Shown: piece by piece, positions 16,921-38,495 of the stretch | Layout: every line of letters begins with the position of its first letter | How positions within the stretch are numbered: position 1 is the first letter of the stretch | Source: Octopus sinensis | Taxonomy: Eukaryota | Assembly: GCF_006345805.1 (NCBI RefSeq) | Contig: NC_043013.1 | Span: 21,824,001 to 21,888,000, forward strand | Direction of reading: 5' to 3' | Length of the DNA: 64,000 nt | Made by a program: the position numbers and the translations under genes | The notes under the pieces: generated by a model | Told to the model about the DNA's origin: nothing | The model's input: only the letters and a program-made list of their open reading frames with translations | Database searches by the model: none

Positions 16921-16951
<31 letters not shown>

Positions 16952-17741: not shown

Positions 17742-17778
<37 letters not shown>

Positions 17779-17780: not shown

Positions 17781-18972
17781 ACATATATATATAAAATGGG
17801 TGAATATTAACATGACCTAAATCTTCTGAACTAGGCCTATCCCTTGTCCAGTGAGATAAAAATTAATCAGGGAGCGTTGGTTGTCACTAGATTCCACGAC
17901 ACTCACCCTCAGTGTTCGTTGGTTGTCCTTCATTTCCACGACACTCCCGCTCTTGAGATATTGGCTATTTTTATGCCATCTCTATTACTTAAATCCAACA
18001 GGACTATTTTGAATCGTTGTGTAAAACTCTGCTAGTTTCGTATGGAAGAATTAGTTAATATAAATTTTATGTCGTAACTCTCTACGACAATTTTCTTTGA
18101 CTTCTAAATGTACTGTAAATATTAAATGTAAATAAATAAACTAATTTAGTAAATAGTTTCTCTTTCTTCATTTTCTTCAACCTTTTAATGAGATTTATTT
18201 CTGTATCCATGAAACTGTTATTATAGCGGTGACCTTTCAACATGTACCTTTCAGCGTCTTGGTGTATAATTCATCACGGTGTTTACGCAGCCTGAGTTAA
18301 GATTTATGTATAGTGATAACACTTATAGTTAAGTTATAAGTGACCGGTATATCACTATAGATTTCTACTCAGTAAACATCTATATTTATTATCTTTTCCA
18401 AGTCAAAAACATTCTACACCAGATTATCCAACACAACCTTATATATTGGTGGAAAGCCGACGTGGACTTAGAAAAGTCTACTCAGGACAATAATCACTCT
18501 GTAAATAAGATAGAATCAACCCGTTATAAAAGTGGTGACTCGCCTTTATAAAAAGTGGTTAATTCTACGAACAAGTTATACGTAATACTTTCACTAAAGT
18601 CTCTGAAGTGTCTAGAATGTTCTCTTCCAAGAAATACTGATGCTTCTGATCTCGTTTGAAACAAATAACATTTCTTTTTCTTTCTTCCTCTTTTTCTATT
18701 TTTGCTCCTCTCTCTTTTTATCTCACCCTCACTCCTCCTATCCCTCTCTCTTATGTTCCCTCTCTTTCTATCCCTCTCCAATTTGTCGCTCTCACTCATT
18801 ATTTCAACGGATAATTTTATGATGATGTAGTGGTGGTCATCGCCGTATTTGTTACTGAATTATGCTTGTAGCACTTTTCTTTCTTATTCCTTTCATCTTT
18901 ATTGTTTGTAAATTAATGCTAAACGTGAATATGAAATATGAAATTTTTTACCAAAATAAATTTTCATTGCAG

Positions 18973-19008
18973 TTCTCTTCTACATCTCACTGACATTTGG
19001 AAATGGAC
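18973..19008 (+). CDS. Probable signal-peptide exon of the PAN/apple-domain gene (xLFYISLTFGNG)
   Basis: Acceptor TTTTCATTGCAG and donor GAC|GTAAGT. It is 36 nt, phase 1-1, and hydrophobic, ending in GNG; splicing to 19566 gives GNG-LEYLKY. The start-codon exon is unresolved (candidate 18862-18907, MLVALFFLIPFIFIV). Confidence 0.5.
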
Positions 19009-19565
19009 GTAAGTAAATTTATATCAATATATAGACATATATCTATGAAAATTATGAAAATCACTACTCAAAACATTAATTTATAAGTTCAGTGGAGGAA
19101 AATATTTTCCTTCTCTAAGTAAATTAGATGAAAAGAAGAATCAAGATAAATCTCGTATTATGAAGAATTCGATTCTTAACATAATTTCCATTGGTGATAA
19201 TTCAGTTTTACGTCAGTTTGTAAGCATTTTGTTAAATAAAACAAAGGGCTGGTATTAGGGGACATTCTTTACAACAGACAACCGTTAAACATTATAGTAT
19301 ATAACTTGTGAATCATTTAAATAATAGAATTAATTAAACAACATTAAAGACTCATTCGCAGTAATTTTCATTAAACAGATTATATATCCCAAGATGCTTT
19401 GTACCTACACTATGGTAGTAACAACTCTGTCACTTCTTCCTGGTAAAAATATCAATGCTGATCCTCAAACATTTAATATTTTCTATCTTTATTATTATCT
19501 ATTTTCACAATGTTTTATTTTCGTCTTCGTATTTTGGTTGTTTAATTTGCCTGGCTTTGTTACAG

Positions 19566-19823
19566 TTGAATATCTGAAGTATTTTATGAAAGTACCAGAC
19601 GCCGGTCTGAAAGATGCCAAAACATTGATGACACTTGACGTGGATGCCTTCAACTGTTCGAAGAGTTGTTTTGAAACTTCTGCATGTAAATCCTTCGTGA
19701 ACAGAACGATAAGTCCAAGCTGTATTTTATACGAAGAAGACTCAACAGAGAGGATGCTAATAAGAGAATATAATACCCATTTTTATCAGTTGAGAAGATC
19801 TGTGCCGACCAAGTATGGAGACG
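19566..19823 (+). CDS. PAN/apple-like domain exon 1 of a secreted multi-PAN protein
   Basis: Acceptor CTTTGTTACAG and donor GACG|GTAAAC; 258 nt, phase 1-1. Peptide ...DAFNCSKSCFETSACKSFVNRTISPSCILY... shows the C-x3-C-x5-C-x-SF...C-x-L PAN pattern. Confidence 0.75.
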
Positions 19824-20399
19824 GTAAACAAATTTGAATCTTCTTGTGTTTATTTCATTCCTTGACTTATATTCTATGTTTTAGTCCAAAGAGAGACAAT
19901 ACGGTTAGCATTTGAAAATTGACTGCGATTTCTCTGGTCGATGTAGATTAGCGTGACTTGAAAAATATTTGTTTGTAGAGTTAAAATTCTAATAAAGTTT
20001 TGAGTGATGTGTTTAGCAGAAAATTTAGAAACGGATTGAGACACAAGATTACCGAAGAGGGAAGAGAAAATGTAAAGTTTTATAAGACCGTTTTGTCATG
20101 TGACTCTCAGAGAATATTCTCAATATATTTGATGAAGAAAATAATGCATGTCTGGAGTGTAATATTTGTGTATGGATGACATCAGTTTGTGAGGGAGACG
20201 AAAAGGGATCTTATAATAAAACAGAATATGATATGCGTTTTTAAAATTACGCACAATAATTACACAAGATGCTTAACTGAATGTGTAAATCAGATTTTGT
20301 TTTTAAATATAAATCAAAGAAAATGGGGAAAAAAGTAGGGTAACTTACTCACAAATGAATGAAAACCCTCAAACTGGATCAAATCAGAATTGCCCACAA

Positions 20400-21400
20400 T
20401 CCTGAGTAACTCTCTCTCTCTCTCTTTCTATACCTCTTCTTCTCTTTCTCTTTCTCTTGTTCATGTGTCTATTGTTTCGTTCGTCTAAAACTGTCTTACA
20501 AGCAAATATGGCGTCAAACGCAAAACATGACCAGATTGTCGCTTTGAGAGCAGCTAGAGTGAGCAACGATGACATAATAAAACGGTTGAATGTGCTTCGT
20601 AAACAGTGTTCAATACCTGGAAACAATATATGGAGTCCGCTACAACCTCTAGCAAGCCAATTCCTAGTAGGAAGCAAACAATTGAAATGTTGACGCTGTG
20701 AAGAAACGAATGAACGGAAATCCCCGCAGGATGCAAGAAAAGGATTTTTAAAGTGGATTTAAAACTTGCTGCAAAAAAGAAACAATCCAAGCGGTCAATT
20801 TCAGCAACATCCAAGAAGAAACGGCTCGACAGGGTTAAAACTATGTTAGTTGAGATGATGCGTGTTGATATGATCCGAATAGAAACTATTCACCGTGGAG
20901 GCAGTTCCCAATAGAATGACAGGCTTTATGCACATAATGCATAACAGGGTTCATATACGCCATCAGAAGACAGCTTCTCTCACACTGTGGGTTACAGATG
21001 CATCAGATGGGTCCAAGCCTCCATCGATCTTCATCGATTCTGGGCGTCAACGATAACAGTGAGGTTTATTTGGAAATGTTGGATGAGATAGTGTTACCCT
21101 GGATCACAGAAACCTTTGGTGACCGTTACACCTTCATTCTAGACAGGGCTCCGGCCCATACATTCAATTTGAGACAGAGGTGGTTTAAAGAGCATTTCAA
21201 CGGTTTTGGAGACAAGAAAATATGGCCTTTCCTAAGTCTAGATGTCAATCCCATGGACTTTGCAATTTGGGGTATCTGAGAGAGCAGTGTTTCTGCACGT
21301 TCCTATTCAAATGTGTCAGAACTCAAGAGAGCTCTTCTGCCATTATGGGTCAATTTCTTAATTGCTTTTTTTCCATTTCTGTACATATCATTATGTCTTC
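20400..21400 (+). mobile_element. Degraded Tc1/mariner-superfamily transposase (Tc1/maT-like)
   Basis: HDQIVALRAARVSNDDIIKRLNV (HTH region), YTFILDRAPAHT and WPFLSLDVNPMDFAIWG (SPDLNP.D motif). Frameshifted; TIRs not identified. Confidence 0.7.
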
Positions 21401-21429
21401 TTGGGCTTCTATATTTCTTAACGTATCTT

Positions 21430-21790
21430 GGATTTCATGCAGCCACTCCGCTTCACCACTGAATATTTACCTGATTATTATGGCCTTGCCAAGGAGGCAA
21501 ACATTTTGTTACAGTTCTACTGTGCCCTTTTTCCGATGTCTTTTATACCTCTCATGGTGCCTTCTGAAAATGTCCCCAAGGATCCAGCAATAATTGTGAC
21601 TATCTTCACCTTCTTCATTTCCCATAACCGAGCTTTTTCGTACTTAAGAGGGTTGTATATATTTATTTTATCGCCTTCCTTCTTGACTTCAAAAGAGTAT
21701 GCAGCATCAATGATATAGCATATGCGGCCCACCACAACTATGTCCGGTCTGTTAGCTCTAGCACTTGATCTGTTTGGATTAAGAAATCCC
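21430..21790 (-). mobile_element. 3' fragment of an RLE-type (R4/Dong-like) LINE
   Basis: ANRPDIVVVGRICYIID...KINIYNPLKYE..RLW...IIAGSLG (PD-(D/E)XK restriction-like endonuclease). Confidence 0.65.
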
Positions 21791-21799
21791 ACGTGATTT

Positions 21800-23185
21800 T
21801 GCTAATCTCCGACTCCACCACTCGAGCAAGGATAGCCAATCTCATCCAGAAATGGGTAGAGAAGAAATTGTCTCTGAAATGTTGAGTGGAGGTGGCGAAT
21901 GCGTACATAGTTTCCCTCATTTATTACCACCTGACAGTCGTCCATTCCCTTGCTTTGTAGCTGACCAAGCTAGAACGCTTAATATCCCGCCTTCTGTGGA
22001 AAGGACGTGTTCCCCTCGTCATACGGTTCATCTGCTATCAACAGCCACAGAGTGGAGGACCGGGCGTGCCGTGGCTAATGATGCACAGATGTGCGCTGAG
22101 GCTACAATATCTCCAGCATTTTCTTAACGGTGAACAGATGTGGTCACCGTGTGTCAAGTAGGATTGTCTGCAGCTCATATCGTTGACGGAGTTATAGTAC
22201 TCAATCATACGTAGACCCAGAAAGGACGCGTGGCACCTGGAGTGTCATCAAGCGCTCACAGCTTCCTGTCAGTCGGGCAACGCGGTCAGAGGGAATTCCA
22301 CTGCGGAGTTCTATAGGGGATTAGCAGCGGGTAAGAGTAACGTCGTCCTTGTGGAAACTCTGGGCGTCGGAAGGGATCAACTAACTGATCTTTTCCGGAG
22401 GACAATCAGGCCGAATCGTATGGATAACTTCCAAAGTTCTATGGCCTGGCTGTGTTATCGGGGAGTTCTGCCGGCTCCAAACGATCTCTGCAGACACAAA
22501 AGTGCTGTCAGTCTGGTTTGTTCGAGGTGTGCGCAGAACAACGACGAAACCGTCCTGCACGCACTCATTCAGTGTCCTAGCATTACTGACTTGTGCAGCT
22601 TTGTCAAACGGTTGTTATCGCGTGTAGAACAGATCCGGTTATCATGTGAGTCCATCGTGAAGATCGCCCCGATGCTGCCTTCCTTTGGCTAGGAAGAAAA
22701 GACAGTTTTCCTCTATCTGGTGGCTATGGTGAAGGCGGTGGACGAGACTGAGAGGACTGAAGACAGATGCTTTCCTCTTGGGCCAAACCCTCATCGACAT
22801 TTTCAAGTTCCACTTAAAAAGGTGAGGGTAGAGAGGGAAGTTCTGCTCCCCAGTAAATTTGATGGAAGGTGGGTGTATGTGGTGAGGATGGTCCGAGTAA
22901 ACGGGCCTGCTCTGAACTTTCGTTTGTAAACTGGAGGAGTTGAGGAGAGAGGCGCCTACTGAGTTGCCCTGGCGGTCGGAATAACCAGGTAGTGTGGGGT
23001 ATGCGTTTGTCTCTGTGAAGAGTTAACCCCATTTGGGGAATTTTTATTGTTCATTTTTTTTTGTTATTTATTTTCTGCTACTTATTGTATACACGGCATT
23101 GTTCAGCATCCCACTTGTCCCTTTGTGTTGTGTTGTCCCTTTTTTTTGTGTTCGGCCCTTAAAAGAAAGGTCAGATATAAGAGGG
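21800..23185 (+). mobile_element. 3' fragment of a Tx1/L1-clade LINE
   Basis: CSRCAQNNDETVLHALIQCP zinc motif, homologous to the 56000-56900(-) segment; T-rich 3' UTR. Confidence 0.7.
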
Positions 23186-23214
23186 TATTATTATTATTAT
23201 CATTGTCATTTACT

Positions 23215-23750
23215 CTTAATCTGCATGTTTGATACAATCACCTGCCGGGGCACACCCAGCGCCCTAGGGCAAGTGAAGGTTAAGAGTTGTTGAAATATAG
23301 CTGAAAGCTTGGGGAGATATATCTCCATGTAATGCAAACACAAACATTTACATTGATAGGGTTTTTCTAAGGATGTGGGCAGTACTTGTTAGCACAATCT
23401 TTTGGATTTCCTTGAGACATGGTTTTCCAGGGATATTGTCTAGGTGTTTCTGACATCCCTTTTTTTTTTTTTTTTTTTATCATACCTAGGGTACCTACAA
23501 TAACAGGAACAGTTTTTGTTTTAAGATTCCACATCCTCTGTATTTCGATTTCCAGGTCCTTATATTTACTAAGTTTGTCAAATTCCTTGACAGATACATT
23601 TTTATCAGTGGGGACGCTTACTTCTATTAGTCTGCAGGTATTTTTCTTCCCTGTCTTTAACAATTATGTCTGGTCGATTAGCCTTGATCGTTCTGTCAGT
23701 GTTGACTGGAAAATCCCAGAGGATGGTGACATCTTTACCTTCAACAACTA

Positions 23751-23816
<66 letters not shown>

Positions 23817-24108
23817 GTTGTTGTTGTTATATGAAAACTCACAGCTTATTTTGCTGGGTATGATGGTAAGTGTCAGCTTTTCACAAGCAGCGGACTAAGG
23901 TGACACTTCTTTACTGGTCATGCTTCAAGAACTCCGCGAAGAATTCTTGTAGTTCCAAGCAATGCTGATTTTAGTAGGCGTTCTAACTTCACACTTGCAC
24001 CGATCTTTTTCGGCCATGTTGCTAGTTGAGTGCTGATACTTCCATCTGTACTAATTACCCTGAGTATCACGTCTACTCTCCTCATTAACCACAACGTTAT
24101 TATTATTA

Positions 24109-24169
<61 letters not shown>

Positions 24170-24935: not shown

Positions 24936-24992
<57 letters not shown>

Positions 24993-25011
24993 TATTATTA
25001 TTATTATTATA

Positions 25012-25213: not shown

Positions 25214-25287
<74 letters not shown>

Positions 25288-25429: not shown

Positions 25430-25572
25430 ATTGCTATTGTTGTTGTTGTTGTTGTCGTCGACGACGAGGTAAGATGCGTTTTGAACGCTCCGTAAGTTTG
25501 AATTTTTCTTGTGTATTTTTGAAGGTTGTTGACTGTTATGTAAGTGTTGACTGTTAAGAGTTCTGACGGTCA

Positions 25573-26053
25573 GTACCTATTTCTTTACTACTCACAAGTG
25601 GTTAAACACAGAGAGGAGAAACAAGGACAGACAAACGGATTAAGTCGATTATATCAACCCCAGTGCGTAACTGGTACATATTTAATCGACCCCGAAAGGA
25701 TGAAAGGCAAAGTCGACCTCGGCAGAATTTGAACTCAGAACGTAACCGCAGACGAAATACGGTTACGCATTTCGCCCAACGTGCTAACGCTTCTGCCAAC
25801 TCGCCGCCACGCAGATGAAATACCTATTTCTTTACTACCCACGAGGGGCTAAACACAGAGTGGACGAACAAGGACAGGCAAACAGATTAAGTCGATTACA
25901 TCGACCCCAGTGCGTAACTGGTTCTTAATTTATCGACTACGAAAGAATGAAAGGCAAGTCGACCTCGGCAGAATTTGAACTCAGAACGTAACGGCAGACG
26001 AACTACGCAAGGCATTTCGCCCGGCGCGCTAACGTTTCTGCCAGCTCGCTGCC
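25573..26053 (-). mobile_element. Two tandem tRNA-derived SINEs (family 2)
   Basis: Units ~25573-25808 and ~25820-26053. Head GGC(G/A)GCGAG(T/C)TGGCAGAA...GAGTTCAAATT; tail GGGTAGTAAAGAAATAGGTA. Mirrored at ~61132-61377. Confidence 0.85.
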
Positions 26054-26059
26054 ATTCTG

Positions 26060-29000
26060 ACGGTTAGTACCACGGCGATTTATCCTCTGAACAGCACAAA
26101 GAACAGTACCAACACCACGAACTGCACCGGCACCACCATTAACACTGAAAAAGAAAAAAGTCAAGAAAACACCGCCAAAGCCACCACCGCTATGAACAAG
26201 AAAAACAACGAAGAAAATACAAACACAAACGTAAATGACAAATCCAATAGACACGGTTTCGCTTCTGCGGCGAAACAAACAAGAGAAACGATAAACGTCA
26301 CATTAGCGGATTTAAAAAATGTCAAGGGGCTCTTAGTGAGACACGGTAATAATGTCTCACTAAATACCCCGAAAGAAATTGTTCTTAACACAAACAGAAG
26401 AAGCATTACGTACAAATGTATAAACAAACAAAAAAGTCATTGGAACGAGCAACACAAGAATAACTGGAACTAATTCTGAAACCAATTTGGAAGAAGAAAA
26501 CATAAGAGACACGTGGAAAATGGTTCGGGACTGAGGAAGTGCGCTACGCAACGGAAGAAGCAAGAAAATATTCCACAGTGCCACTATTTTCAGAAGACCT
26601 TATCGTCGTGCCGACATGTCTTGGTCGGCACGTTAACAAAATTAATATCGGCCGGGGGGGGGAGTACCCCTGAATTAAACATATGTTGGCTGATGGCCGC
26701 TGTCTTCTATGATATAGAGGATACGGCCGCGATACTAGAGGTGTTTAAGTTGCACCGACAAAATTGGACGGGTCAGGAGTTGGAACGCTTTGTCCAAATT
26801 GAACAAGAGGACCTAAAGTCTATCCCTGACTCCTTAAACTTACCGAAGAGCCCGAGGCTACGCGTGACTGTGGAGGGCAGGAGGCCGAGGTGCTACTTTT
26901 GTGGAAACAACCAGCACATCAACGTCGACTGCCAAAATACAAGGAGATGCGTCGAACGCTACAACCGACACCAGAAACAGGGACATCTCCAGTACAGCAG
27001 CAACAACAGCAGCAGCAGCAGCAACCGAGGTACCCCCACCATCGGCCGGGGTACCACTACCCCCAGTCGCAGTAACACCACCACCACCAACTACTGTAGC
27101 AGTAGCAGCAGTAACAAATGAACACCAACAAAACCAAAAGTCGGAGTCAATCCTCCTTCCCGACCAAAACAACTCGGACTGTTCGAGTAATGAAGTCGAG
27201 AGGGGAGGGGAGTGGCAAACAGTTTCCCCACCCCCACCAAAAGAAAAAAAAGAAAAATCTACTGAGACAGTAGAGGAAAAAAGTGGGGAGGCGCAAGGAC
27301 ACTGAACGTCCCAACAGCGGCAACACCCACACACAACAGCCGAGAACAACAACACCACCTCCACCAGCACTATCACCTAAAACTCCAACTCCACATCCAC
27401 CTGCACTATCACCTCAAACACCAACTCTACCTCCTCCAGCGCTATCACCTCAAACACCAACACCACCTCCTCCGGTGCTATCACCTCAAACACCAACTCC
27501 ACCTCCACCAGCACTGTCACCTCAAACACCAACTCCACCTACACCAGCGCTATCACCTCAAACACCAACTCCACCACAAACAGATTCTACTAGCACCACA
27601 AACCTCACAGCTGTTGATACAGGCAATAATAGATTTAATTACGTACTCAAGAGACAATACAAACACCACCATGAAAGAACTCAAACCACCACCACCACCA
27701 CCACCACCACGCATACAGATATATAAAAACCTCACAACAAAATGACACCATAAAAACAACATTTCCAGATGCTGTGGGGTAGCTCCAAAAGTCTTTTACA
27801 AAATGAATATATAAAAAGCTAGGGAAACACCCACATGAAGTGTACCATCATACCAGGAGACAGTGGTAAGTGGTGCTCTTCTCCATTCTAAATTTATTTT
27901 AACTTGGTGATGCTCAGGATAGTTTTATAGAGGCCAGGGGCCTCGGGTCACCTTGGAGACAACGTCACCTTTTAAATGACCTGAGGTCACTTACTGTAAA
28001 TGTTGCAGCCATTAGTGAATCCAGATTATCCGACCCACGGAGATTTTTCTATCTCCGTGTCTGAGTAGTGTAGTAGTAAAACTGTGGTGGTTTTCTTGAA
28101 GGGTCCATATTTGAATATAAGGGCAGTCTTCCTGGATTCAGAAGGTAAGTTGGTGGTCCTAGATGTCAACAGCAGTGACAGCTGGGCTTTCAGACTGGTG
28201 GCTGCCTATGCTTTGACAGGGGCAGGGTGGTCTGATTACTTCAAGCGTCTGGAGTACGTCTCGGACATTCGTACTAGTAGGGATTAGAACGCTGTCTTAA
28301 ATGGATGTTTCGATTGCATGGGAGTACCTTATAGGAGAGGTGGGTTGCAAAAACCTCAAAAATCTACTCAGACGTTTTCAATTGTCTGCCAGGTACCGAC
28401 TAGATTACCCGAATGTACCAATGTGGACTTGAACAAACCGCATCTGGTTATCTAGATCGTATCTAGATAAAGTATTGTGTAAGCCAGCGGACAATGATAT
28501 CATCGGGTGTCCACAATTTCACATGGTCAGCTACACAGACCACAAATTTGTGTTCTGTACAGTCGACTTGGATAGGCTTCATAGACACGGTCCCGGTTAC
28601 TGGAAGCCGAACACGGCGTGTCAAGCTTACAGAGACCGGATTAGCGAATTAGTTAAGCGGACGTTGTCGGGGGCAATCGTCAACAACTGTTGGTATGCTT
28701 TCAAAAGGGCAAATTAGAGAAGAATTAATTAGGTTTAGCAAGGTGTTGACGATAGGACGAAATAGAATAGAGGGAGATATAGTTAAAAAGTTAGATGAAG
28801 CACTTAGGACATGCATCGCAACCGACGTGTTGGCGGTGAGGTTGATCCTCGACCAATTTTTCGACGCCAAATACGAAAGCTGCGGAGAGGGAATGATAGC
28901 GAAATGATGGGCCCGCGTGATGGAAGTGAAAAGTGACAATAAAGCCACCATTCGGTCTTTGATGGACCAGAACGGATGCAAGGTGTTCGAACTGAAAGAG

Positions 29001-29815
29001 ACGATCACATTAATTTGCATTGCTCGGAGTTTGGTTTGGTCCAGACTTCCAGGTGGAGAAAAACTGGGACGGGGTGACGAGGAAGGTAGCCAACCTCACC
29101 CAGAAATGGGCCGATAGGGAGCTGCTTCAGAGCGGTCGAGGGGAGGTGGCGAATGTGTACATCGCATCTGTCATATATTACCACTTGACCGTTGTCCCTT
29201 GCCCCGTTTGCTGGTTGACCAACCTGGTGCGTTTACTCTTCCCTTTTCTGTGGAAGGGGCGCGTTCCACTGGTCAGGCGCTCCATCTAATGTCAACAGTC
29301 ACTGAATGGAGGTCGGGCATGCCGTGGTTACTAATGCGCAGGTATTCATTGAGTTTGCGGCATCTCCAGCGTTTCCTTGACGGTGAGCAGGTGTGGTCAC
29401 AGTTTGTCAGGCACATTTTTCCATAGACTGTCCCTTTGACTGAACTGCAAAACTGGATTAAGCGTAGACCGAAGAGGGGGTGTTTGGCACAGCCCACCGC
29501 CAGGCGAACGATGAGGTTGGTGTAGTTCCACTCTAGCGTTCTATAGAGGGCTAGTGGAAGGATATTGCGACGACGATATTGCCGTCGATGAAGATCAATG
29601 AATAGACTGTTTCGGAGAACTTTCTGGCCTAGGCCTATGAATAAGTTCGAGAAGTCCTTTGCCTTGCTGTGCCACCGAGGGGCGCTGCCTGTTTGAGATA
29701 TACTTTACAGGTACGGAAGTGCCGCCCTCCATTGGCTGAGAGGAGCAGGCAATTTTTATTTGTTTAGTGGCTGTAGCGAAATCGGTACTATGGTGGACTC
29801 GTCTGAAATGGCTAA
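26060..29815 (+). mobile_element. Degraded near-full-length Tx1/L1-clade LINE (ORF1 zinc knuckle, APE), RT core deleted
   Basis: LRVTVEGRRPRCYFCGNNQHINVDC (ORF1), FRLVAAYA, GPGYWK and FLWKGRVPLVRR. About 1 kb present in the mirror (57040-58080) is missing at ~29000. Confidence 0.85.
27352..27575 (+). repeat. 36-bp minisatellite (about 6 units) inside the Tx1 LINE
   Basis: Reads PPPPALSPQTPT x6 in ORF 27283..27726; the mirror (59354..59644-) has only about 2 units. Confidence 0.85.
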
Positions 29816-29856
29816 AGTCAGAGACTTTCCTCTTTGTTGTTGTTTTTGTTGTTGCC

Positions 29857-29894
<38 letters not shown>

Positions 29895-29916
29895 TATTAT
29901 TATTATTATTATTATA

Positions 29917-29960
<44 letters not shown>

Positions 29961-30142
29961 CCTCTCTTTTATCATCACAATATTATCACAATATTGATGT
30001 CTCTTAAAGAGTAGAAACTATATCTATTAAGTATTTCTCATTATTCAAAAATAAGAAAACCATTCACCGTGAAATGGTCCCACCACCATTACGAAACTCT
30101 ACAAAAGACAACATTGATTTATTTATTTTCTTCTTCTTACAG

Positions 30143-30373
30143 GAAGATGCCCTTTTGATTTGATTTACAGAACTGGTCTACTTAATAACTATGATTTGGG
30201 TGTCATTTCTGCCTTCAATTACACGCAGTGTCTGCTTGTTTGCGAAGCAAAACCAAATTGCCAATCGTTTGACTATAAATTTAATTACAAATCGTGCCAG
30301 CTGTCAACTAAAGATCATACAACTGTTGCGTTGTATTTTGACACGGGTTGGTCTTACACCAAAATAAACAGAG
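30143..30373 (+). CDS. PAN/apple-like domain exon 2
   Basis: Acceptor TTCTTCTTCTTACAG and donor AGAG|GTAAGA; 231 nt, phase 1-1. Peptide GRCPFDLIYRTGLLNNYDLGVISAFNYTQCLLVCEAKPNCQSFDYKFNYKSCQLSTKDHTTVALYFDTGWSYTKINR. Open frame and splice sites are conserved in the mirror copy. Confidence 0.85.
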
Positions 30374-30561
30374 GTAAGAGCTTCATTTTCTTGTTTTTAT
30401 TTATTTATTTTGTTGGAATTATACACAGTCAGTTGGGCAAGACTAAGGTACCACCTTCAAAAATGTGTTAGTCTGTTATATTGAGGCCAGGACTTTGATT
30501 TACTTGGCTCTATCTTTGGTTAAGTCTAATGTCATATATAGGTATGGACTCAATATCAGAT

Positions 30562-30651
<90 letters not shown>

Positions 30652-30859
30652 CATGATACATACATACATAAATACATTCATACATACATACTTGCATGCA
30701 TACATATATAGATGCACGCATGCATGCATACATACATACATACATACTTGCTTGCATAAATATATACATACATACATACATACATACATACATACATACA
30801 TACATACATACATACATACATACATACATACATGCACACACTCATACGTACAGATAACT

Positions 30860-32330
30860 ACTAAATAATCGATGAGCAATAGGGACAAAGATAGCATCAA
30901 ACCTCCATGCTGTGATGGAAATGTCGGCTCTGCTATACTAGTGTGAAAGATGTCACCCACATCATCAGTAGTTGCGACAAAATGCCTACGAGATTCTACC
31001 TTCCCCCTGAGGCATGATATAGTTGCAAAGACTATTTACGATGCAACCCATAGGAAGGACTGCTCGGACGTATACATCGAAGCCATGTTAGAACCAGCAA
31101 GTAATCAGACCTTTTGAAAGCAAGGAATACTGGTGGAACTCCCGCAAAAACAAACGTCAATTCGGTACAAATATAGCAGACCTGATATTGTTCTGTGGTA
31201 CAGGGGAAAAAGTCATGCATTGTTGTAGGGGTCAGCTGCCCAGCGGATGTGAATGTACAATCAAAAGTCTTAGGAAAATAGAACATTTAAGGCTCTTGTA
31301 CCCTGACCATAAAGTCTCGTTTGCACCTTTCATCAGAAGTGCATTAGATTATGTACCAACAAATTTGCACATTTGCAGAAAAACCTATAAATACTCGGTT
31401 TCACAGAGAAAGAGCAAAAGAAAAACTGACGCGGATTGTCCAAATCGATATCTTTTAGTGGCACAGTGAAGATTTGTAAAACATTTTCAAAATACTCCAT
31501 CTGTGATTCTTATGTGAATAGATGCACACGATTGAGTGTATGCATCGACAGTCCCACCAACTCAACCACATATTTGCAATCACCGGGAACTCACTCATCT
31601 CAAAAACACTTGTCGCTATCTTACCGACTGTATGCTTATTGCATTGAGATGGCGGGAAGTTTCTCCAAATGGCGTCTTGCATTGAAAGACAATTTGAAAC
31701 AGCGAAGTGTGTACAGACACAAAAGTATGCTTCAAACTGCTGACAGACCAATTCTTTCAATAGAACCTGCTTTGAAGTTCAAGAACCAAGTCAGATGTTG
31801 TGCCGGGGAGACGCTATTACCTTGACGACCCTGTCTCTTTGAATTATTATCAAAACCCAGCAGAAACCGGGGTTCATTATTGAGGAGTGGTGGAGTGAAA
31901 CGATCTTGTACCAGACTTTCCCAGAGAAAGGGAAATCATCACCTTTAAGGGACTGCATCAATCCCTCAACAGTGATGATGTTGGCTGCAAAGGAAGTCAT
32001 TTGGAAAGCAAAGTTACATTTACTGATGTAAACAATTTTTAGTGTCGATGATGCCTGCCTTTGTGTGTTTCATTTTGTTTTTGTATATTCCACCCTAGGC
32101 TGTTTTTCCCTGCTTCGATACAGTCCTGGCAACTGGAAATTGATGAAGCCACTCCCACGCTTTCTTCGGGACAAGTGTCATTCTTAGGAGGGAAAGCTCC
32201 GTGCACGGTCAAAATGTTTCTGGTCTTGGTATTCCTCATAGACAGACTAGGACCCCAAATTAACAACATGCTGCATATTTTCAGCCAGTATATAATTCAG
32301 CTACATCTGGATGTGTGTAAGTTCATTTCT
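30860..32330. mobile_element. Composite of old LINE fragments (R4/Dong-like and probably Tx1-like) in both orientations; mirrored at ~53480-55020
   Basis: KCRLCYTSVKDVTHIISSCDKM..YLPLRHD.VAK on one strand and LRYGVGIIKW...KTRNILTVH.AFPPKSD on the other. Confidence 0.6.
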
Positions 32331-33064
32331 GGTAACATGCTCAGGTATTATAAAAAATACTGCACGTACAATAATACATGACTTAGAAGCAGCGCTGCGG
32401 ATATGCCAACACACCCGAGCTCGAGGCAGGGCCGCCCTCACGCATTTCTCATGAGGAATTCCAGCAGGGGCTTCGTAAGACCACTGCAGAGATGCTTGCG
32501 AAAAATAAATTCAGTAACCGATTATAGCAGTAACTCGATCAATTCCTAGTAATAACTGAAGAAGGAATTTTTATATTCCGAAATATTATTATATCAGACT
32601 ATGAGTAATTAATTTATAACAGTTATGATAGTCCATTCTGCATTGTTCTGCCGTTGAAGACACGCTATATTTCGCACTGTATATATTTGTAGGCCACTAA
32701 AATAGTCACACCAGATTGTTCGGTTATAAAATCATGTGACCGAAAAAAGGAGGAGAAAAACAGATAGAAAAAGGAAAAGATGTAAAATATAAAAGTAAAC
32801 AAAGAAAATAAGGGACAAAAACAGGAAAGAAAATTCACATCGACACTGCTCTTCTCAATACGTGTGACATGTCGGTTAATACAATCTGTTGATTTCCAGC
32901 ATGGATGGTAATCTAGGGATCATACTTAAAAAATCTTCAGTTCAAGTGCTCCTACAATCACTGGTATTGCAACCGTCTTGAGATGCCATCTTTGTTCCTA
33001 CTACTGTGTAGAATTATTAAATGTTGTTTAGTTTCCACTTTTGTCTTGTACATGATATCATCAT

Positions 33065-35765
33065 TACGGGGTACAACCTCTTCCGTAAGGACCGCACTAA
33101 CCGCCGTGGTGGTGGTGTGATGGTCTACGTTCGTTCAAATTTTTTGGTAATTCCTTGTGCCGATTTGAACGAATCACAAGAAGAAGTTTTTTTCTGTGAC
33201 GTGCGTATGACCATGTCAACACTCCTGCTTGGCGTTGTTTATCGTCCCCCAAGTTACCATCGGGACACACAGATTTGCAATGTCCTCCGAGCTGCTGCCA
33301 GGAAAGCAGCCACTTATGTGTTTATTGCAGGCGATTTCAATCATCCTGAGATCGATTGGGAGACCTTCCATTGGCCACAGAGTGCAAACGATTTTGTTGA
33401 GCTTGTGCTGGACTCAAACTGGTCACAAGTAGTCACCTCTCCAACAAGAGGCGACAACACTTGGACCTGCTCTTCACCACAACTCCTGAAGCGGTTATCA
33501 ATTGCACTACGGAGGAACCTCTAGGTGACTCTGATCATGCTATGATCATCGCCAATCTGGCTCTTGCGGGCAACAAAAACCTGAACCATCTCCAATCTGC
33601 TTCCTTCGATTGGAAGAGAGCAGATTGGAACTGTACCACACTGAACTACAGCACCCAAACTGGCGTGAATTCTACAACTCTGGAGATGTGAATACTATAC
33701 TCCAGAGTATCCTGGACTCAATATGGGCAGCATGTGCAGCATCAGTGCCACGTAAACAAAAAAAGAAGAACCGCCCCAAAAGGGCAATTTGGGAAACTTC
33801 AGCGGTCCGACTTGCCAGGAGGGAACGTCGGACTGCTGAACGGGAATACAGGTTGCATAAATCAGACACCAACAGGAAGAAGCGGAATAAATCCTCCAAC
33901 CATCTCAAGCAAGTGACAAAAAAAGCAGTGCTTGAATTTGAACAGTGCATAGCAGCCAATCCTGACAGCAAGGTTTTCTGGAAATATGTGCACTCAAAGC
34001 AGAGACCTCACTCTCCAGTGGGCCCTCTTCGCAACCCTCACACAAACCAGATCACTGACGACCCCAAGGAATGCGCAGAACTCATTGCCGAGTGCTATGC
34101 AAACATATTCACTGTTGAAAGTCAAAATGTACCATCTTCACCATCACTAACAGCAAACTCCATAACAACTATGGAATTTACACCTGCAATGCTGCGACGT
34201 CACCTTCAAAATAAGCGCAACTATGCCTCCCCTGGTCTCGATGGAGTTACATACCTGCTTCTCAAACGTGGCAGGCACTTCCTTTTACACCAGCTTTCTA
34301 TTTTCTTCCAGTACTGTCTCAACAATGGTGCTACTCCGGAGCAGTGGAAAACTGCCAGTGTCATTCCTCTGTTCAAAAAGGGCGACCGCACATCACCTGT
34401 CAACTATCGCCCAGTCAGTCTCACTAGCTGTATTGCAAAACTGATGGAATCGTGTGTCAGAGAAACACTCTGGAACTTCTGGAGCTCTCACAGTCTCATC
34501 CGACCCTCACAATATGGATTTGTCCCTAACTCCAGCTGCAGTGACCAGCTTGTCGAGTTCCTTGAGGACATTACTCAGATTACTGACAGTGGCTCATGGG
34601 TGGATGTTGTCTACCTTGACTTTGCTAAGGCTTTCAACTCTGTGCCACACAAAAGGCTTATGGTGAAACTCTCTGCAATGGGTGTGGGGGATGACCTTTT
34701 TAACTGGTTGAAATCCTTCATCCTCAGCCGAAAGGAGGTAGTCACAGTTCTAGGACAGCACTCTACACCATATGAGATGTCATCGGGTGTACCACAGGGA
34801 TCTGTCCTTGGTCCCCTCTTGTTTGTGGCATACATTAACGACATAGATGCCAATTTAAAGAATGCCACAGTATTGAAATATGCAGACGACATCAAGCTGT
34901 ACCTTGAAATCAAGAGGACAGATCCTGATGTCTACAACTCTTTCCTGCAATCAGACCTAGACACAATGCAGCAATGGATCACAGACTGGCAACTGAAACT
35001 GGCTGTGGACAAGTGTACCACCATGCATTTTGGGAGAAAAAAACCCTGCGTTCACATACTCCCTCCACAACACTGATATCAAGAAATCCTCTTGCGAGCG
35101 TGACCTAGGCATCACTGTCAGCAGTGATTTGCGTTGGTCAAAGCATATCTCTAAGATTGTCAGGAAGGCCGAGGGTGTCTTGGCATCACTCAGCAGGTCT
35201 TTTGTTAGCCGCTCTCCAGCCATCTATTTAAAACTGTATACAGCTATGGTACGACCACACTTGGAATTCGCATCATCAGTTTGGAACCCCTATCTTGCAC
35301 AGAACATTGACCTCCTGGAATCTGTCCAGAGACGTGCAACCAAACGCATACCCTCCATCAGACACCTACCATATTCTGAGCGCCTTGTTTCCCTGGGCAT
35401 GGATTCACTGAAGCTCCGGCGTTTGGCGACGGACTTGGTAAACACCCACAAAGTTATCAACCACCTCACCAACAACAACACTGAACACCTTTTTGATCTC
35501 CATGTGTCTAACACACGTGGACATGCCTACAAAGTCAGAAAACAATACAGCTCCCATGACTTTCGGAAACATTTTTTCACGCTCAGAGTTGCTGAAGCAT
35601 GGAATAAACTGCCTGCGTCAGTTGTTGACTGCCATGACACTGCATCTTTTAAGGCCCTCATGCTTTCCGAAATCCGCCGAAACTACACCTGATTATATAT
35701 ACACTTTAGATGAGTTGTAGTGCACCTGAGCACTGTACACAATTATTATTATTATTATTATTATT
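33065..35765 (+). mobile_element. 5'-truncated CR1-clade LINE (APE + RT), young, absent from the mirror arm
   Basis: GYNLFRKDRTNRRGGGVMVYVR, GDFNHPEIDW, SDHAMI, SPGLDG, YRPVSL, LDFAKAF, GVPQGSVLGPLLF, YADD, RPHLEFA. About three frameshifts and an (ATT)n tail. The empty site is at ~50612-50620; no clear TSD. Confidence 0.93.
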
Positions 35766-36415
35766 ATATGTGAGGGATGGAGGCGATAGTAGGAGAAAGA
35801 TGAGCAGCTTGGTGGGGTGGGGGGCGGGCGTGGATGTTTTTGAATTTTCCTTTTCTTTCTGTAGGTTTTTCTGTGTTTTATAGTTTTCGTAATTGTGCAG
35901 TTTGCATATATTGGCAGGTGCTTATCTCCTTAATTTTTTTCGTGCGTTTAATTTGTGGCTATAAAAAGAACGTTTACATATTTGAGTAGTCAGGGTGAAA
36001 AGAAGGGTAAAAGTTTCACAGAAAATTGTAGATATTAAAGTTTTTAATTTTCTCAAGATGACCGTTTGTATGTCCAGCCAGAGCAAACTGTAGTGTTCTT
36101 ACAATAAAAAGGGTGTTTATATTTTTGAATATTCAGGGAGAAAGGAGAGAGTTAGTATTCACAGAAGTTGTAAATATTTTTTAACGTTTTTTAAAGATTT
36201 TAAAGATGATCGTTTGTGTGTTCGCCCACAGAAAATTGAAGATGTGTAAGTTTCTAGCCTTATGGGGTGGTGGTGAGATTTTAAAATACTCACAGGAGAT
36301 TGTAGATGTTCCAATTACCAAAAGTTATATTTCAGTTGGTCTGCCGGGTTGTGTTAGTGTTTCTGTGTCTTTGGCTACTGACTGGTCAGTGCAGCCGCTG
36401 TCAAGGCTAGCACTC

Positions 36416-36480
<65 letters not shown>

Positions 36481-37120
36481 CACCATTATAATTATTGTTA
36501 TCATTATTATTGATTTTGATATTTTAGAAGGATTGACGAACCTCTTCACAAAGGTAAATAGACAATACGAAAAGCATTTCGTCCGGCGTGCTAACGATTC
36601 GGCCAGTCCGCCGCTTTAGCATTGCAGACAACATATTAAAATTAATTCCGATCTATTCTACACGCTTCTCTGAGCTGTTCCAGAAAAAAAATCATTTTTT
36701 GCCAACTCCAATGCGGATTAATTATATTTGTAAGATATATACACCGGACTCCTTAACCAAGAATCGAAACCTCGGTCTTCACGCTTGTTTATATTGTTCT
36801 CGCCATTTGTGTTTAGAATTCATTCGTTTTACCTATTTAAATCGCCACCATTTTAGATGAGACAGAGTGTAATCTTGTTGACCCATTCCGGTCTATTGTC
36901 AATGGTCTGACTTGACTTTAGTACTGCAATAAATTCGAGATACCAAGAGAAAAATGTTCTCTTTCCTCTGCAACTTCCAAACAGTTAACTATAGGCACCT
37001 TCTCGGGAGCTTTGCCCCATTTACCCTACTCAAGTTAGGGTTCACTATTAACAACTACCATTGTAATAGATTATCCATCAAAACTTACTAAATTTTGTGT
37101 TTACTTCCCACTCGTCGCAG

Positions 37121-37132
37121 TTGCAGAACCGC
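37121..37132 (+). CDS. Candidate 12-nt micro-exon (linker VAEP)
   Basis: TACTAA branch-like motif, pyrimidine tract, CGCAG|TTGCAGAACCGC|GTAAGT. The signals are conserved at 44530-44541(-). Confidence 0.45.
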
Positions 37133-38187
37133 GTAAGTAAAATCTACAGTAATTGTGAAATACCTTTCAGCAGTTCTTTGCAGTGCATCCAGAAATGTTA
37201 TCTAAGCAATGCACAGTCTTTCGCCAACTTGTCACATCTCTATGTGTTACAAACAACTTGCTACATCGTGCCTGTTACGCCTTTCCTGTTACAATTATAC
37301 CGTTATACATACAAAGACATGTGTGAAGTACATTTCGAAAGAAGCTAGAATCTTTATAAACGTCTGCCCCTTCATATCTGAAGCCTTGTGTTATTACTAG
37401 AAATAACTGATAGTAAATAAATCTCAACATATATTAAAGAAGTAATGATTTCTTATATAAAATCGTCTTATATATAAATAGGGAAGTCGATTGTATTAAG
37501 GAGATTAGGTTTTCTTGATTAATATTAAAGAAATCACGAAAGATATTAAGACCATCAGAAGAATAAGAAACTATTTTTATTCCATTTCAGAACTTTGGAA
37601 CGATTTCAAACAGACAAATACACTGGACAAGATTAACTCTGTCGGATGTGGTATAAGAGTTTTCGACTCTTATTATTTCGTTAACAGTAAGACCCTATTT
37701 TTGCTAATTTTTTGTGTCCTTTTTTCTTTTTCTTGTTTCTCATCTTTAATTCATTGATCTTCTGTCTCCAGTTCTTGTCGAAAAAATAAGAGAAATTAAT
37801 GTCGCTCTCTTCTTCATCGCATTATTTCTTCTACTTAGAGTCCTAATTCTTAGTTAAATATATTAGCAGTAAATTTATAATTCCTCTCCCCGAGATACCC
37901 AGCCACATGCCCCTTCTTCTCCCGTCATACATGCTATTACACCAACCAGATCACATTCCGCATCAATTATTATCCCAAATCCTTCATTTCTAGATTATAC
38001 AACAAAAAGGATCTCACTCCATACTCGCACTACTCTAAAGATGTCCAAACGGAACATTAATAAAATCGATCTATCGAATCAATAGTCCATATCCATTCGT
38101 TTCCCTTGTACCTTCCAATGAAGTGAAATAGCTTCATTTATGTTGTTATATTTCTTGTGTTTTCTCTTGCTTTTTTCACTATTGCAG

Positions 38188-38378
38188 AAAAAGAAATTAA
38201 TGATTTGACAACTTATTCAACTTTTTCCTTCAAAAAAAATCCATATCACAACCTTATTACCGAGGCCCAAATGCATGCTCACTCGGTTCTGGATTGTTCC
38301 CGTTTATGTTTGATATCTTCTACATGTACCGCCTTTTCATATACTAACACTAAGTGCCTACTAAAGAAACTGATCTGA
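38188..38378 (+). CDS. Terminal PAN/apple-like exon 3
   Basis: Phase-1 acceptor TTTTCACTATTGCAG. Peptide EKEINDLTTYSTFSFKKNPYHNLITEAQMHAHSVLDCSRLCLISSTCTAFSYTNTKCLLKKLI* shows the PAN Cys pattern. Confidence 0.82.
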
Positions 38379-38489
38379 ACTTTAATGGAATTCACCCAAA
38401 AATTACTTCTCCATGAAATGTGAGCAAGTCTTCAACGGATCACGTTTGCTAATAATAATTATATAAGTTAAAATGTGTGTTTCTTTGTG

Positions 38490-38495
38490 AATAAA
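38490..38495 (+). terminator. Poly(A) signal of the + strand PAN gene
   Basis: AATAAA ~110 nt after the stop, conserved as TTTATT at 42986-42991 in the mirror gene. Confidence 0.5.

What the first reader, a model, noticed from the sequence alone, without database searches (positions are those of the whole stretch)
18862..38495. Small secreted triple-PAN protein gene built from phase 1-1 exons inside TE-filled introns
Three PAN-like exons join in frame (…YGDG-RCPF…; …KINR-EKEIN…) into a ~240-255 aa protein with no other domain. The CDS is under 0.8 kb spread over ~19.5 kb, and the ORF track shows it only as unrelated fragments. One module per symmetric exon favours exon shuffling and domain-number change. 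The 5' end is ambiguous. Model A is 18862-18907 + 18973-19008. Model B is 19394-19442 (MLCTYTMVVTTLSLLP). A 19379-19414 exon is also possible.
Basis: partly seen in the sequence, partly recalled or inferred. Interest (0 to 1): 0.7.

Follow-up and report, generated by a model that had tools for sequence, protein, structure and literature searches.

The report
Octopus secreted three-PAN-domain protein gene

Summary
The three PAN exons are real. Each scores above Pfam's PAN_1 cut-off alone, all are phase 1-1, and 11 Octopus proteins (53-71% identical) show the same YGDG|RCPF join.

- It misses a 96-nt phase 1-1 exon (37591-37686). Seven family proteins, including Argonauta, have this exon. It supplies the first Cys of PAN3.
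- The start is neither model A's first exon nor model B. Homology places it at 12279-12309 (MLRRNYLRII), spliced to 18973-19008, which is model A's second exon.

The corrected gene has six coding exons, an 843-nt CDS over 26.1 kb, and a 280-aa product: a signal peptide plus PAN1, PAN2, a linker and PAN3. It aligns without gaps to O. sinensis and O. bimaculoides proteins of 276-282 aa.

The family was found only in octopods and no paper on it was found. A structure model of a 69%-identical relative matches apple/PAN structures.

The window also carries a second copy on the minus strand (55399-43112) and the first exon of a third (2460-2430). These lie in two large inverted duplications. Between copies 1 and 2 the PAN2 exon differs by 16%, against about 6% in non-coding DNA.

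Verdict: a new member of a known kind, of modest interest.

The parts
12109..12114 (+). TATAAA motif 165 nt upstream of the start codon; possible core promoter
   Evidence: Read directly from the sequence. The same motif is in the inverted copy near 2630. Its role as a promoter is inferred; there is no transcript data.
12279..12309 (+). Coding exon 1 (31 nt, ends in phase 1): MLRRNYLRII, the n-region of the signal peptide
   Evidence: A regex scan found ATG...T|GTAAGT here. It matches the N-termini of 8 homologues. It aligns at 95% DNA identity to the annotated start of O. sinensis LOC118766702 in L001.
18862..18907 (+).
   Evidence: No homologue begins MLVALFF.... The ORF and donor are kept in L001, but the surrounding non-coding DNA is equally conserved. 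An alternative first exon cannot be excluded without transcripts.
18973..19008 (+). Coding exon 2 (36 nt, phase 1-1): (F)LFYISLTFGNG, the h- and c-regions of the signal peptide
Evidence: Nearly identical in 8 homologues. Identical in L001 at 0/36 differences.
19394..19442 (+).
   Evidence: In the O. sinensis paralogue locus the ATG is ATA and a 1-nt indel follows it. It is absent from all homologous proteins.
19566..19823 (+). Coding exon 3 (258 nt, phase 1-1): the PAN1 module
   Evidence: PAN_1 27.9 bits alone. tblastn to homologues gives E 1e-30 to 1e-48.
30143..30373 (+). Coding exon 4 (231 nt, phase 1-1): the PAN2 module, the most variable part of the family
   Evidence: PAN_1 33.3 bits alone. 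Mean family identity is 47%, against 66-81% for the other parts. It differs from copy 2 at 37 of 231 nt, against about 6% in the flanking introns.
33021..35692 (+). LINE-type retroelement (endonuclease plus reverse transcriptase ORFs) in intron 4
   Evidence: RVT_1 126 bits and Exo_endo_phos 32 bits. Segment 33064-35766 has no counterpart in the mirrored copy, so the element inserted after the duplication.
37591..37686 (+).
   Evidence: Bounded by ...ttccatttcag| and |gtaaga. Present in 6 Octopus homologues and Argonauta hians P0014. Also intact in copy 2 and at two places in L001.
38188..38378 (+). Coding exon 6 (191 nt including the TGA stop): the core of PAN3
   Evidence: PAN_1 24.3 bits alone. 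Homologues P0003 and P0011 end at the same residue...CLLKKLI or ...CVLKKLV.
38490..38495 (+). AATAAA polyadenylation signal 112 nt after the stop
   Evidence: Read directly. The same gtgaataaaatc motif is conserved after the stop of copy 2.
43112..55399 (-). Second paralogue (partial in the window): PAN2 at 55399-55169, linker at 44071-43976, PAN3 plus stop at 43302-43112. Its PAN1 and 5' exons lie beyond the window end
   Evidence: Found by tblastn. Splice sites and the reading frame are intact. The shared part is 82% identical in amino acids to gene 1.
2430..2460 (-). Exon 1 of a third paralogue (MLRRNYLQII + T|GTAAGT) pointing out of the window's left edge
   Evidence: It lies in the left arm of the inverted duplication 1-5473 / 10128-18421.
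25553..61394 (.). Inverted segmental duplication B: arms 25553-39182 and 61394-41895, spacer about 2.7 kb. Genes 1 and 2 sit tail to tail
   Evidence: the repeat finder and a self-blastn give blocks of 86-96% identity.
1..18421 (.). Inverted segmental duplication A: arms 1-5473 and 18421-10128, spacer about 4.7 kb. The promoters and first exons sit head to head
   Evidence: Self-blastn gives blocks of 88-95% identity.

Best explanation
This is an intact protein-coding gene of an octopus (genus Octopus or a close relative). It belongs to a family found only in octopods, whose members are small secreted proteins built only of PAN/apple modules.

Six coding exons are spliced into an 843-nt CDS: 12279-12309, 18973-19008, 19566-19823, 30143-30373, 37591-37686 and 38188-38378. 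The 280-aa product has a signal peptide of about 22 residues (MLRRNYLRIIFLFYISLTFGNG, inferred cleavage before LEY). It continues with PAN1, PAN2, a short helical linker and a PAN3 that lacks the usual C-terminal strand. The mature protein has 14 Cys, 3 N-glycosylation sequons and no membrane segment.

Inferred mechanism: after secretion it acts as a disulfide-stabilised, multivalent extracellular binding protein that binds carbohydrate or protein, as other PAN-only proteins do. PAN2 is the variable module and probably sets specificity.

The family grows by local segmental duplication, here in inverted orientation. After duplication the PAN2 exon diverges faster than the surrounding introns.
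For: Shown:
- Each of the three exons passes the PAN_1 cut-off alone. The corrected protein scores 62.7 bits.
- All exon boundaries are canonical AG/GT, and all internal exons are phase 1-1.
- The 280-aa product aligns without gaps to P0002 (282 aa) and P0004 (280 aa), and with two small gaps to P0003 (276 aa), at 65-69% identity.
- Argonauta hians P0014 has the same PAN1-PAN2-linker-PAN3 order.
- Exon 1 and its upstream DNA align at 95% to the annotated start of O. sinensis LOC118766702.
- An AlphaFold model of P0002 has pLDDT 74 and pTM 0.65. Its Foldseek hits are prekallikrein/factor XI apple domains (E 1e-7), SML-2, MIC4, plasminogen PAN (rmsd 2.4 A over 80 residues) and the HGF N domain.
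- By sequence, the nearest solved structure is the SML-2 galactose lectin (E 6.5e-5).
- No hydrophobic stretch follows residue 25: the maximum 19-residue Kyte-Doolittle mean is 0.99.
- All named strong hits are octopod. The next named hits are octopus multi-PAN proteins and generic PAN-repeat proteins of an annelid and an oomycete, and three had no name.
- Between copies 1 and 2, PAN2 differs at 37/231 nt against 5.8-6.1% over 9-10 kb of non-coding DNA. Fisher p is 2.5e-5 against all non-coding DNA and 0.005 against local flanks (from the gapped blastn count of 31/229). The excess stops at the exon edges, and Cys and framework codons are kept.
- For linker plus PAN3, dN/dS is 0.27, which indicates constraint.
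Against: - No transcript data could be consulted. Splicing, the start site and expression therefore rest on homology to proteins that are themselves computational predictions, and several of those are visibly mis-built (P0005, P0006, P0009).
- The spliced window protein could not be submitted for structure prediction, so the fold evidence comes from a 69%-identical relative.
- The linker and the N-terminal part of PAN3 are modelled at low confidence (pLDDT about 48-61).
- No ligand, tissue or phenotype is known for any family member, and no paper was found.
- For PAN2, dN/dS is 0.73, not above 1, and dS (0.23) is also above the intron divergence. Positive selection is therefore not proven.
Confidence: 0.8

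Rival explanations
1. Transcription would start just upstream of 18862 (model A), and the mRNA would skip the 37591-37686 exon, giving a protein of about 253 aa.
For: The 18862-18907 ORF and its GT donor are retained in an O. sinensis paralogue locus. Because the 96-nt exon is phase 1-1, skipping it keeps the frame. One Gnomon model (P0001) skips it, although the exon is intact in that gene.
Against: All 8 homologues with an N-terminus use the distal ML(R/Q)xN..II exon. That region is no better conserved than the neighbouring intron. Seven family proteins, including Argonauta, contain the linker exon. Without it, PAN3 loses its first Cys. Model A's N-terminus has no charged n-region and about 24 hydrophobic residues.
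Confidence: 0.08
2. Gene 1 is a recently duplicated, silent or decaying copy (an unprocessed pseudogene in the making). Its intact frame would simply reflect its youth.
For: Its exact product is not among the annotated proteins of three Octopus species. The locus is a young inverted duplication at about 94% identity. The O. sinensis gene that lies upstream of LOC118766702 in L001 and best matches gene 1's 3' half carries a 1-nt insertion in its PAN3 exon.
Against: The 843-nt frame is open across six exons. All ten splice sites, the AATAAA signal and all Cys codons are kept. For linker plus PAN3, dN/dS between the copies is 0.27. The O. sinensis insertion is in a T-run and may be an assembly error.
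Confidence: 0.1
3. The excess divergence of the PAN2 exon comes from gene conversion or recombination with a more distant paralogue, or from relaxed constraint. On this reading it does not come from diversifying selection.
For: Synonymous divergence in PAN2 (dS 0.23) is also well above the intron divergence of 0.064. The paralogues are mosaics. Against the O. sinensis LOC118766702 gene, gene 1's 5' part is 95% identical, the middle does not align, and the 3' end is 86-88% identical.
Against: The excess ends at the exon boundaries. It sits in clusters of loop codons, while Cys and framework codons are unchanged. PAN2 is the most variable module across the whole family, at 47% mean identity.
Confidence: 0.3
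4. The exons are part of a much larger multi-PAN gene, like the 1730-aa and 2643-aa octopus proteins.
For: Octopus proteins with 7 and 13 repeats of the PAN1-PAN2 pair exist.
Against: A signal-peptide exon pair precedes PAN1. A conserved stop and AATAAA follow PAN3, and homologues P0003 and P0011 end at the same residue. The neighbouring copies are on the opposite strand.
Confidence: 0.02

Closest known systems
Octopus 'uncharacterized / Apple domain-containing' proteins: O. sinensis LOC118766713, LOC118761179 and LOC118766702; O. bimaculoides LOC106868906; Argonauta hians Ahia01_000849900
   Same: Same length class (276-282 aa) and the same signal peptide. Same PAN1-PAN2-linker-PAN3 order and, for P0003 and P0011, the same C-terminal end. 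Identity is 65-70%. DNA is colinear with an O. sinensis cluster on CM016875.1.
   Different: No annotated protein is more than 71% identical, so this copy is unannotated or comes from another species. At this junction the copies are inverted, whereas the compared O. sinensis locus is tandem.
Apicomplexan microneme PAN/apple lectins: Sarcocystis muris SML-2 (2YIL) and Toxoplasma gondii MIC4
   Same: Secreted proteins made only of PAN/apple modules. SML-2 is the best solved match by sequence (E 6.5e-5) and among the top matches by fold.
   Different: They have 2 or 6 modules rather than 3, and identity is about 15%. They come from an unrelated lineage. Their galactose-binding residues were not compared, so the lectin function is only an analogy.
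Factor XI / plasma prekallikrein apple-domain disc
   Same: Best Foldseek matches (E 1e-7 to 3e-6), with consecutive PAN modules aligned over about 270-340 columns.
   Different: Those have four apple domains fused to a serine protease, each with a third (C1-C6) disulfide. The octopus protein has no protease domain. Its modules have the 4-Cys core plus at most one extra N-terminal Cys.
N-terminal PAN domain of plasminogen and hepatocyte growth factor
   Same: The single-module fold matches at rmsd 2.2-2.8 A over about 80 residues, with TM 0.67 relative to the HGF N domain. The 4-Cys core is the same.
   Different: There the PAN domain is one module in front of kringles and a protease-like domain. 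Here PAN is the only domain type.
Leech antiplatelet protein (LAPP), a small secreted salivary single-PAN collagen binder (recalled from memory, not tested)
   Same: A small secreted invertebrate protein made only of PAN.
   Different: It has one module. No sequence comparison was run here, and no expression data link the octopus family to salivary glands.

Membership tests
PAN/apple domain superfamily (Pfam PF00024 PAN_1) | Profile match above the curated gathering score | tested here: met
   Exon translations taken alone score 27.9, 33.3 and 24.3 bits against a cut-off of 21.4. The whole protein scores 62.7 bits in three stretches.
PAN/apple domain superfamily (Pfam PF00024 PAN_1) | Core of four Cys (C-x3-C ... 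C ... C) in each module | tested here: met
   Cys are at 53/57/63/75 in PAN1, 138/142/148/160 in PAN2 and 254/258/264/274 in PAN3. They are conserved in the family alignment.
PAN/apple domain superfamily (Pfam PF00024 PAN_1) | Fold: an alpha-helix packed on an antiparallel beta-sheet | tested here: met
   Tested on relative P0002 (69% identical), not on the window protein. The model has pLDDT 74 and strand-strand-helix-strand-strand-strand order in PAN1 and PAN2. All top PDB matches are PAN/apple structures. PAN3 lacks the last long strand and its N-terminal part is modelled at low confidence.
Apple subtype (factor XI / prekallikrein) | A third disulfide joining the N- and C-termini of each module (six Cys per module) | tested here: not met
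   PAN2 and PAN3 have one extra N-terminal Cys (111 and 205) but no C-terminal partner, and PAN1 has none. The modules are therefore the generic PAN type, not the apple subtype.
Octopod small secreted three-PAN family | Colinear full-length alignment: signal peptide, PAN1, PAN2, linker, PAN3 and a shared stop position | tested here: met
   Alignment to P0002 and P0004 is gapless, and to P0003 nearly so. Profile E-values within the family are 1e-90 to 1e-157. Argonauta P0014 covers profile positions 47-279.
Octopod small secreted three-PAN family | Location in the paralogue cluster (shared non-coding DNA) | tested here: met
   Non-coding DNA is 94-96% identical to O. sinensis CM016875.1 at 22.01-22.06 Mb, including the promoter and exon 1 and the 3' flank.
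Galactose-binding PAN lectins (SML-2, MIC4) | Conserved sugar-binding residues and measurable glycan binding | not tested
   The SML-2 structure paper is not in the searchable library. No residue-level comparison was made and binding cannot be assayed here.
Secreted protein (classical signal peptide) | Charged n-region, hydrophobic h-region, small residues at -3 and -1, and no later membrane segment | tested here: inconclusive
   The sequence MLRRN / YLRIIFLFYISLTF / GNG fits by inspection. The maximum 11-residue Kyte-Doolittle mean is 2.43, and no later hydrophobic stretch exists. Residues 1-26 are unstructured in the model. No SignalP-type predictor was available.

The most novel reading that the evidence does not exclude
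The family is an octopod-specific set of secreted recognition molecules with a conserved signal peptide, a stable PAN1/PAN3 scaffold and a PAN2 module under diversifying selection. It would be generated and reshuffled in palindromic segmental duplications. That pattern resembles venom, immune or gamete-recognition gene families, and would point to a role in immunity, prey or pathogen binding, or chemical self/non-self cues.
Probability: 0.15. Interest if true: 0.55.

Novelty: new member of a known kind. Interest (0 to 1): 0.3.

Why it matters
- **Annotation.** This is a good test case. A 0.84-kb CDS is scattered over 26 kb of repeat-rich octopus DNA, with 31-nt and 36-nt signal-peptide exons, and an ORF-based view cannot see it. 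The exact product is missing from the public protein sets that were searched.
- **Biology.** The gene adds an unannotated copy to a small, uncharacterised, octopod-restricted family of secreted PAN-only proteins.
- **Evolution.** The locus shows how the family grows. It has mirror-image duplications of about 94% identity, a LINE that inserted after the duplication, and a PAN2 exon that has changed about 2.5 times faster than its own introns.
- **If confirmed.** If PAN2 is confirmed as a selected specificity module, the family would be a candidate for lineage-specific recognition functions in cephalopods. As it stands it is an ordinary gene of unknown ligand.

Tried and rejected
- I used homologues plus per-exon window translations instead (A3, A4).
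- **First structure model.** The AlphaFold model of P0004 from 14 sequences was poor (pLDDT 49). It was replaced by a model of P0002 from 25 sequences (pLDDT 74).
- **Literature.** Searches found nothing for octopus or cephalopod with PAN domain, apple domain, PAN_1, 'Apple domain-containing' or six LOC identifiers. The SML-2 structure paper is not held, so the sugar-binding residues were not compared.
- **Model B.** Rejected: the ATG is not conserved and a frameshift follows it in the O. sinensis paralogue locus.
- **Exon at 19379-19414.** No homologue shows it.
- **Model A first exon.** Not supported by any homologue, but it cannot be formally excluded.
- **Larger multi-PAN gene.** Rejected on the conserved stop, the polyA signal and the opposite-strand neighbours.
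- **Assembly artefact.** An artefact as the cause of the inverted repeats is unlikely. The arms differ by about 6% and by kilobase-scale insertions.
- **Mariner-like ORF.** The ORF at 20998-21279 gave no Pfam hit.
- **Source species.** It could not be fixed. Non-coding DNA is 94-96% identical to an O. sinensis locus, which fits either a paralogue in that species or a close relative.

Full report
**What the window is.** Base composition of 29-50% GC, abundant microsatellites and retroelement ORFs indicate an animal genome. Protein homology places it in the genus Octopus or a close relative. Every close match of the predicted protein is from O. sinensis, O. bimaculoides or O. vulgaris. Non-coding DNA is 94-96% identical to O. 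sinensis chromosome CM016875.1 at 22.01-22.06 Mb.

**Checking the observation.**
- Each follows a polypyrimidine tract and AG. The first two end before GTAA, and the third ends in TGA.
- All are phase 1-1.
- Translated alone they score 27.9, 33.3 and 24.3 bits against Pfam PAN_1, whose gathering score is 21.4. This is far beyond chance.
- A search of 5.8 billion proteins returned 11 Octopus proteins at E 1e-55 to 1e-98, annotated as 'uncharacterized' or 'Apple domain-containing'.
- Their alignment confirms the YGDG|RCPF join in every member.

There are two corrections.
- *Linker exon.* Most homologues carry 32 extra residues between PAN2 and PAN3 (ELWNDF.Q..TLE.INSVGC....DSYYFV.K).
  - The window encodes them at 37591-37686 as a 96-nt phase 1-1 exon bounded by ...ttccatttcag and gtaaga.
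  - Only the Gnomon model P0001 lacks this exon, yet the exon is intact in that gene's own DNA.
  - Argonauta hians P0014 also has it, so it predates the split between Argonauta and Octopus.
- *True start.* All eight homologues with an N-terminus begin ML(R/Q)xN..II-FLFYISLTFGNG-LEYLKYF.
  - The first part is not at 18862. A pattern scan found ATG TTG AGG AGG AAT TAT CTT CGA ATT ATT T|GTAAGT at 12279-12309.
  - This region aligns at 95% to the annotated start of O. sinensis LOC118766702.
  - Model B fails. In that O. sinensis locus its ATG is ATA and a 1-nt indel follows.
  - Model A's first exon is retained there as an ORF, but no better than the neighbouring intron, and no protein uses it.

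**Corrected gene.** The six coding exons are 31, 36, 258, 231, 96 and 191 nt long. The introns are 6663, 557, 10319, 7217 and 501 nt. The CDS is 843 nt spread over 26.1 kb, and AATAAA lies at 38490-38495.
- The 280-aa product aligns without gaps to P0002 (282 aa) and P0004 (280 aa), and with two small gaps to P0003 (276 aa), at 65-69% identity.
- It has a typical signal peptide: MLRRN, a hydrophobic core, then GNG.
- It has no later hydrophobic segment, 14 Cys and three N-x-S/T sequons.
- Pfam finds only PAN-type domains.
- PAN1 and PAN2 each occupy one symmetric exon. PAN3 is split: the linker exon provides Cys205, and in the model of relative P0002 it also provides part of the first strand.

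**Fold.** The spliced protein was not accepted for modelling.
- A model of P0004 from 14 sequences was poor (pLDDT 49).
- A model of P0002, which is 69% identical to the window protein, from 25 sequences reached pLDDT 74 and pTM 0.65.
- In that model PAN1 scores 76-91, PAN2 85-94, the PAN3 core 72-87, and the linker and N-terminal part of PAN3 48-61.
- Foldseek against the PDB returned only PAN/apple structures at the top:
  - prekallikrein and factor XI apple discs, E 1e-7 to 3e-6
  - SML-2 and MIC4, about E 4e-5
  - plasminogen PAN, rmsd 2.4 A over 80 residues
  - the HGF N domain, TM 0.67
- By sequence, the nearest solved protein is the galactose lectin SML-2 (E 6.5e-5).
- The modules have the four-Cys PAN core but not the apple-type third disulfide.

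**Family breadth.** A profile search of 1.84 billion representative proteins gave 215 hits at E<=1e-3 and only 8 at E<=1e-30.
- Look-ups of 20 of these showed that every named strong hit is octopod: O. sinensis, O. bimaculoides, O. vulgaris or Argonauta hians.
- The non-octopod named hits were generic PAN-repeat proteins of an annelid and an oomycete. Three hits carried no name.
- The core family has about 15 annotated members.
- Larger octopus proteins of 1730 and 2643 aa contain 7 and 13 repeats of the PAN1-PAN2 pair. This fits module duplication, although they could be fused gene models.
- No paper on these proteins was found.

**Surroundings: three mirror-image copies.**
- tblastn found a second copy on the minus strand, with intact splice sites and a conserved AATAAA. 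Its PAN2 is at 55399-55169, its linker at 44071-43976 and its PAN3 at 43302-43112.
- It also found a second exon 1 at 2460-2430 on the minus strand.
- A self-comparison shows two large inverted duplications:
  - 1-5473 against 18421-10128, where the promoters and first exons sit head to head
  - 25553-39182 against 61394-41895, where genes 1 and 2 sit tail to tail
- The arms differ by about 6% and by kilobase-scale insertions, so they are diverged duplicates rather than an assembly echo.
- The LINE with endonuclease and reverse transcriptase at 33021-35692 (RVT_1 126 bits) is present only in gene 1. It therefore inserted after the duplication.
- In the compared O. sinensis locus the equivalent junction is tandem, not inverted.

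**Uneven divergence.** Non-coding divergence between copies 1 and 2 is 5.8-6.1% over 9-10 kb.
- The PAN2 exon differs at 37 of 231 positions (16%), and 20 of its 76 residues differ.
- Using the gapped blastn count (31/229), Fisher p is 2.5e-5 against all non-coding DNA and 0.005 against the local flanks.
- The excess stops at the exon edges. It is clustered in a few codon groups, while Cys and framework codons are unchanged.
- Nei-Gojobori estimates for PAN2 are dN 0.168, dS 0.230 and ratio 0.73. For linker plus PAN3 they are dN 0.051, dS 0.186 and ratio 0.27.
- Across the family, mean identity is 81% in the signal peptide, 73% in PAN1, 67% in the linker, 66% in PAN3 and 47% in PAN2.
- This fits PAN2 as a diversifying specificity module. 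Because dS is also raised, gene conversion from distant paralogues remains a live alternative. The paralogues are mosaics: against O. sinensis LOC118766702 the 5' part is 95% identical, the middle does not align and the 3' end is 86-88% identical.

**Most likely function.**
- *Shown:* an intact gene for a PAN-only protein with a signal-peptide-like N-terminus.
- *Inferred from the PAN superfamily, whose modules mediate protein-protein or protein-carbohydrate binding:* the protein is secreted and works as a multivalent extracellular binder. PAN1 and PAN3 would be conserved scaffold or partner-binding modules, and PAN2 the variable recognition surface. Its ligand and tissue are unknown.

**Verdict.** The coordinates, exon count, protein length and 5' model need correcting. 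The gene is a new, apparently unannotated member of a known but uncharacterised octopod family. Interest is modest (0.3). The palindromic duplications and the fast-evolving PAN2 exon are the only features that go beyond routine annotation.

Noticed in passing
window 43112-55399 (-): A second, convergent paralogue with intact PAN2, linker and PAN3 exons and a conserved AATAAA. Its PAN1 and 5' exons lie beyond the right edge of the window.
   Followed up: yes
window 2430-2460 (-): A mirror copy of exon 1 (MLRRNYLQII + T|GTAAGT) with its upstream region. It is the start of a third paralogue that runs off the left edge.
   Followed up: partly
window 1-18421 and 25553-61394: Two large inverted segmental duplications of about 94% identity, with spacers of about 4.7 and 2.7 kb. 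They place the three copies head to head and tail to tail. The compared O. sinensis locus (L001) is tandem at the equivalent junction.
   Followed up: partly
window 30143-30373 vs 55399-55169: The PAN2 exon is 16% diverged between the copies, against about 6% in its own introns. The excess is bounded by the exon edges and clustered in loop codons. This indicates either diversifying selection or gene conversion.
   Followed up: partly
window 33021-35692 (+): A LINE-type element (endonuclease plus a 488-aa reverse transcriptase ORF) is present in gene 1's intron 4 and absent from the mirrored copy, so it inserted after the duplication.
   Followed up: yes
window 39272-39427 (+) and 42538-42612 (-): These stretches match the C-terminal tails of the O. 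sinensis models P0009 (85% identity) and P0001 (72%). They may be alternative 3' exons downstream of the normal stops, or artefacts of those gene models.
   Followed up: no
L001 about 2660-2680 (O. sinensis CM016875.1): The O. sinensis copy closest to gene 1's 3' half has one extra T in a T-run inside its PAN3 exon. It is either a real frameshift or a long-read assembly error. It probably explains frameshifted models of the P0009 type.
   Followed up: partly
family alignment A2: The signal peptide is the most conserved part of the family (81% mean identity), while the mature PAN2 is the least conserved (47%). This contrast is known from toxin and defence peptide families.
   Followed up: partly
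window 26513-27726 (+), mirrored at 59503-61128: ORFs here include a Cys/His knuckle-like motif and a 36-nt tandem repeat (6.4 copies, 27345-27575) that encodes a proline-rich PPPALSPQTPTP repeat. They are probably a retroelement gag remnant inside the duplicated intron.
   Followed up: no
window 20998-21279 (+): An ORF resembling the C-terminal part of a Tc1/mariner transposase (…DRAPAHT…DVNPMDF…). It gave no Pfam hit.
   Followed up: partly
proteins P0012 and P0013 (O. sinensis LOC118764742, O. bimaculoides LOC106869390): Very large octopus proteins with 13 and 7 repeats of the PAN1-PAN2 di-module; P0012 lies on a different chromosome record. They are either real multi-PAN proteins or fused models of tandem paralogues.
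   Followed up: partly
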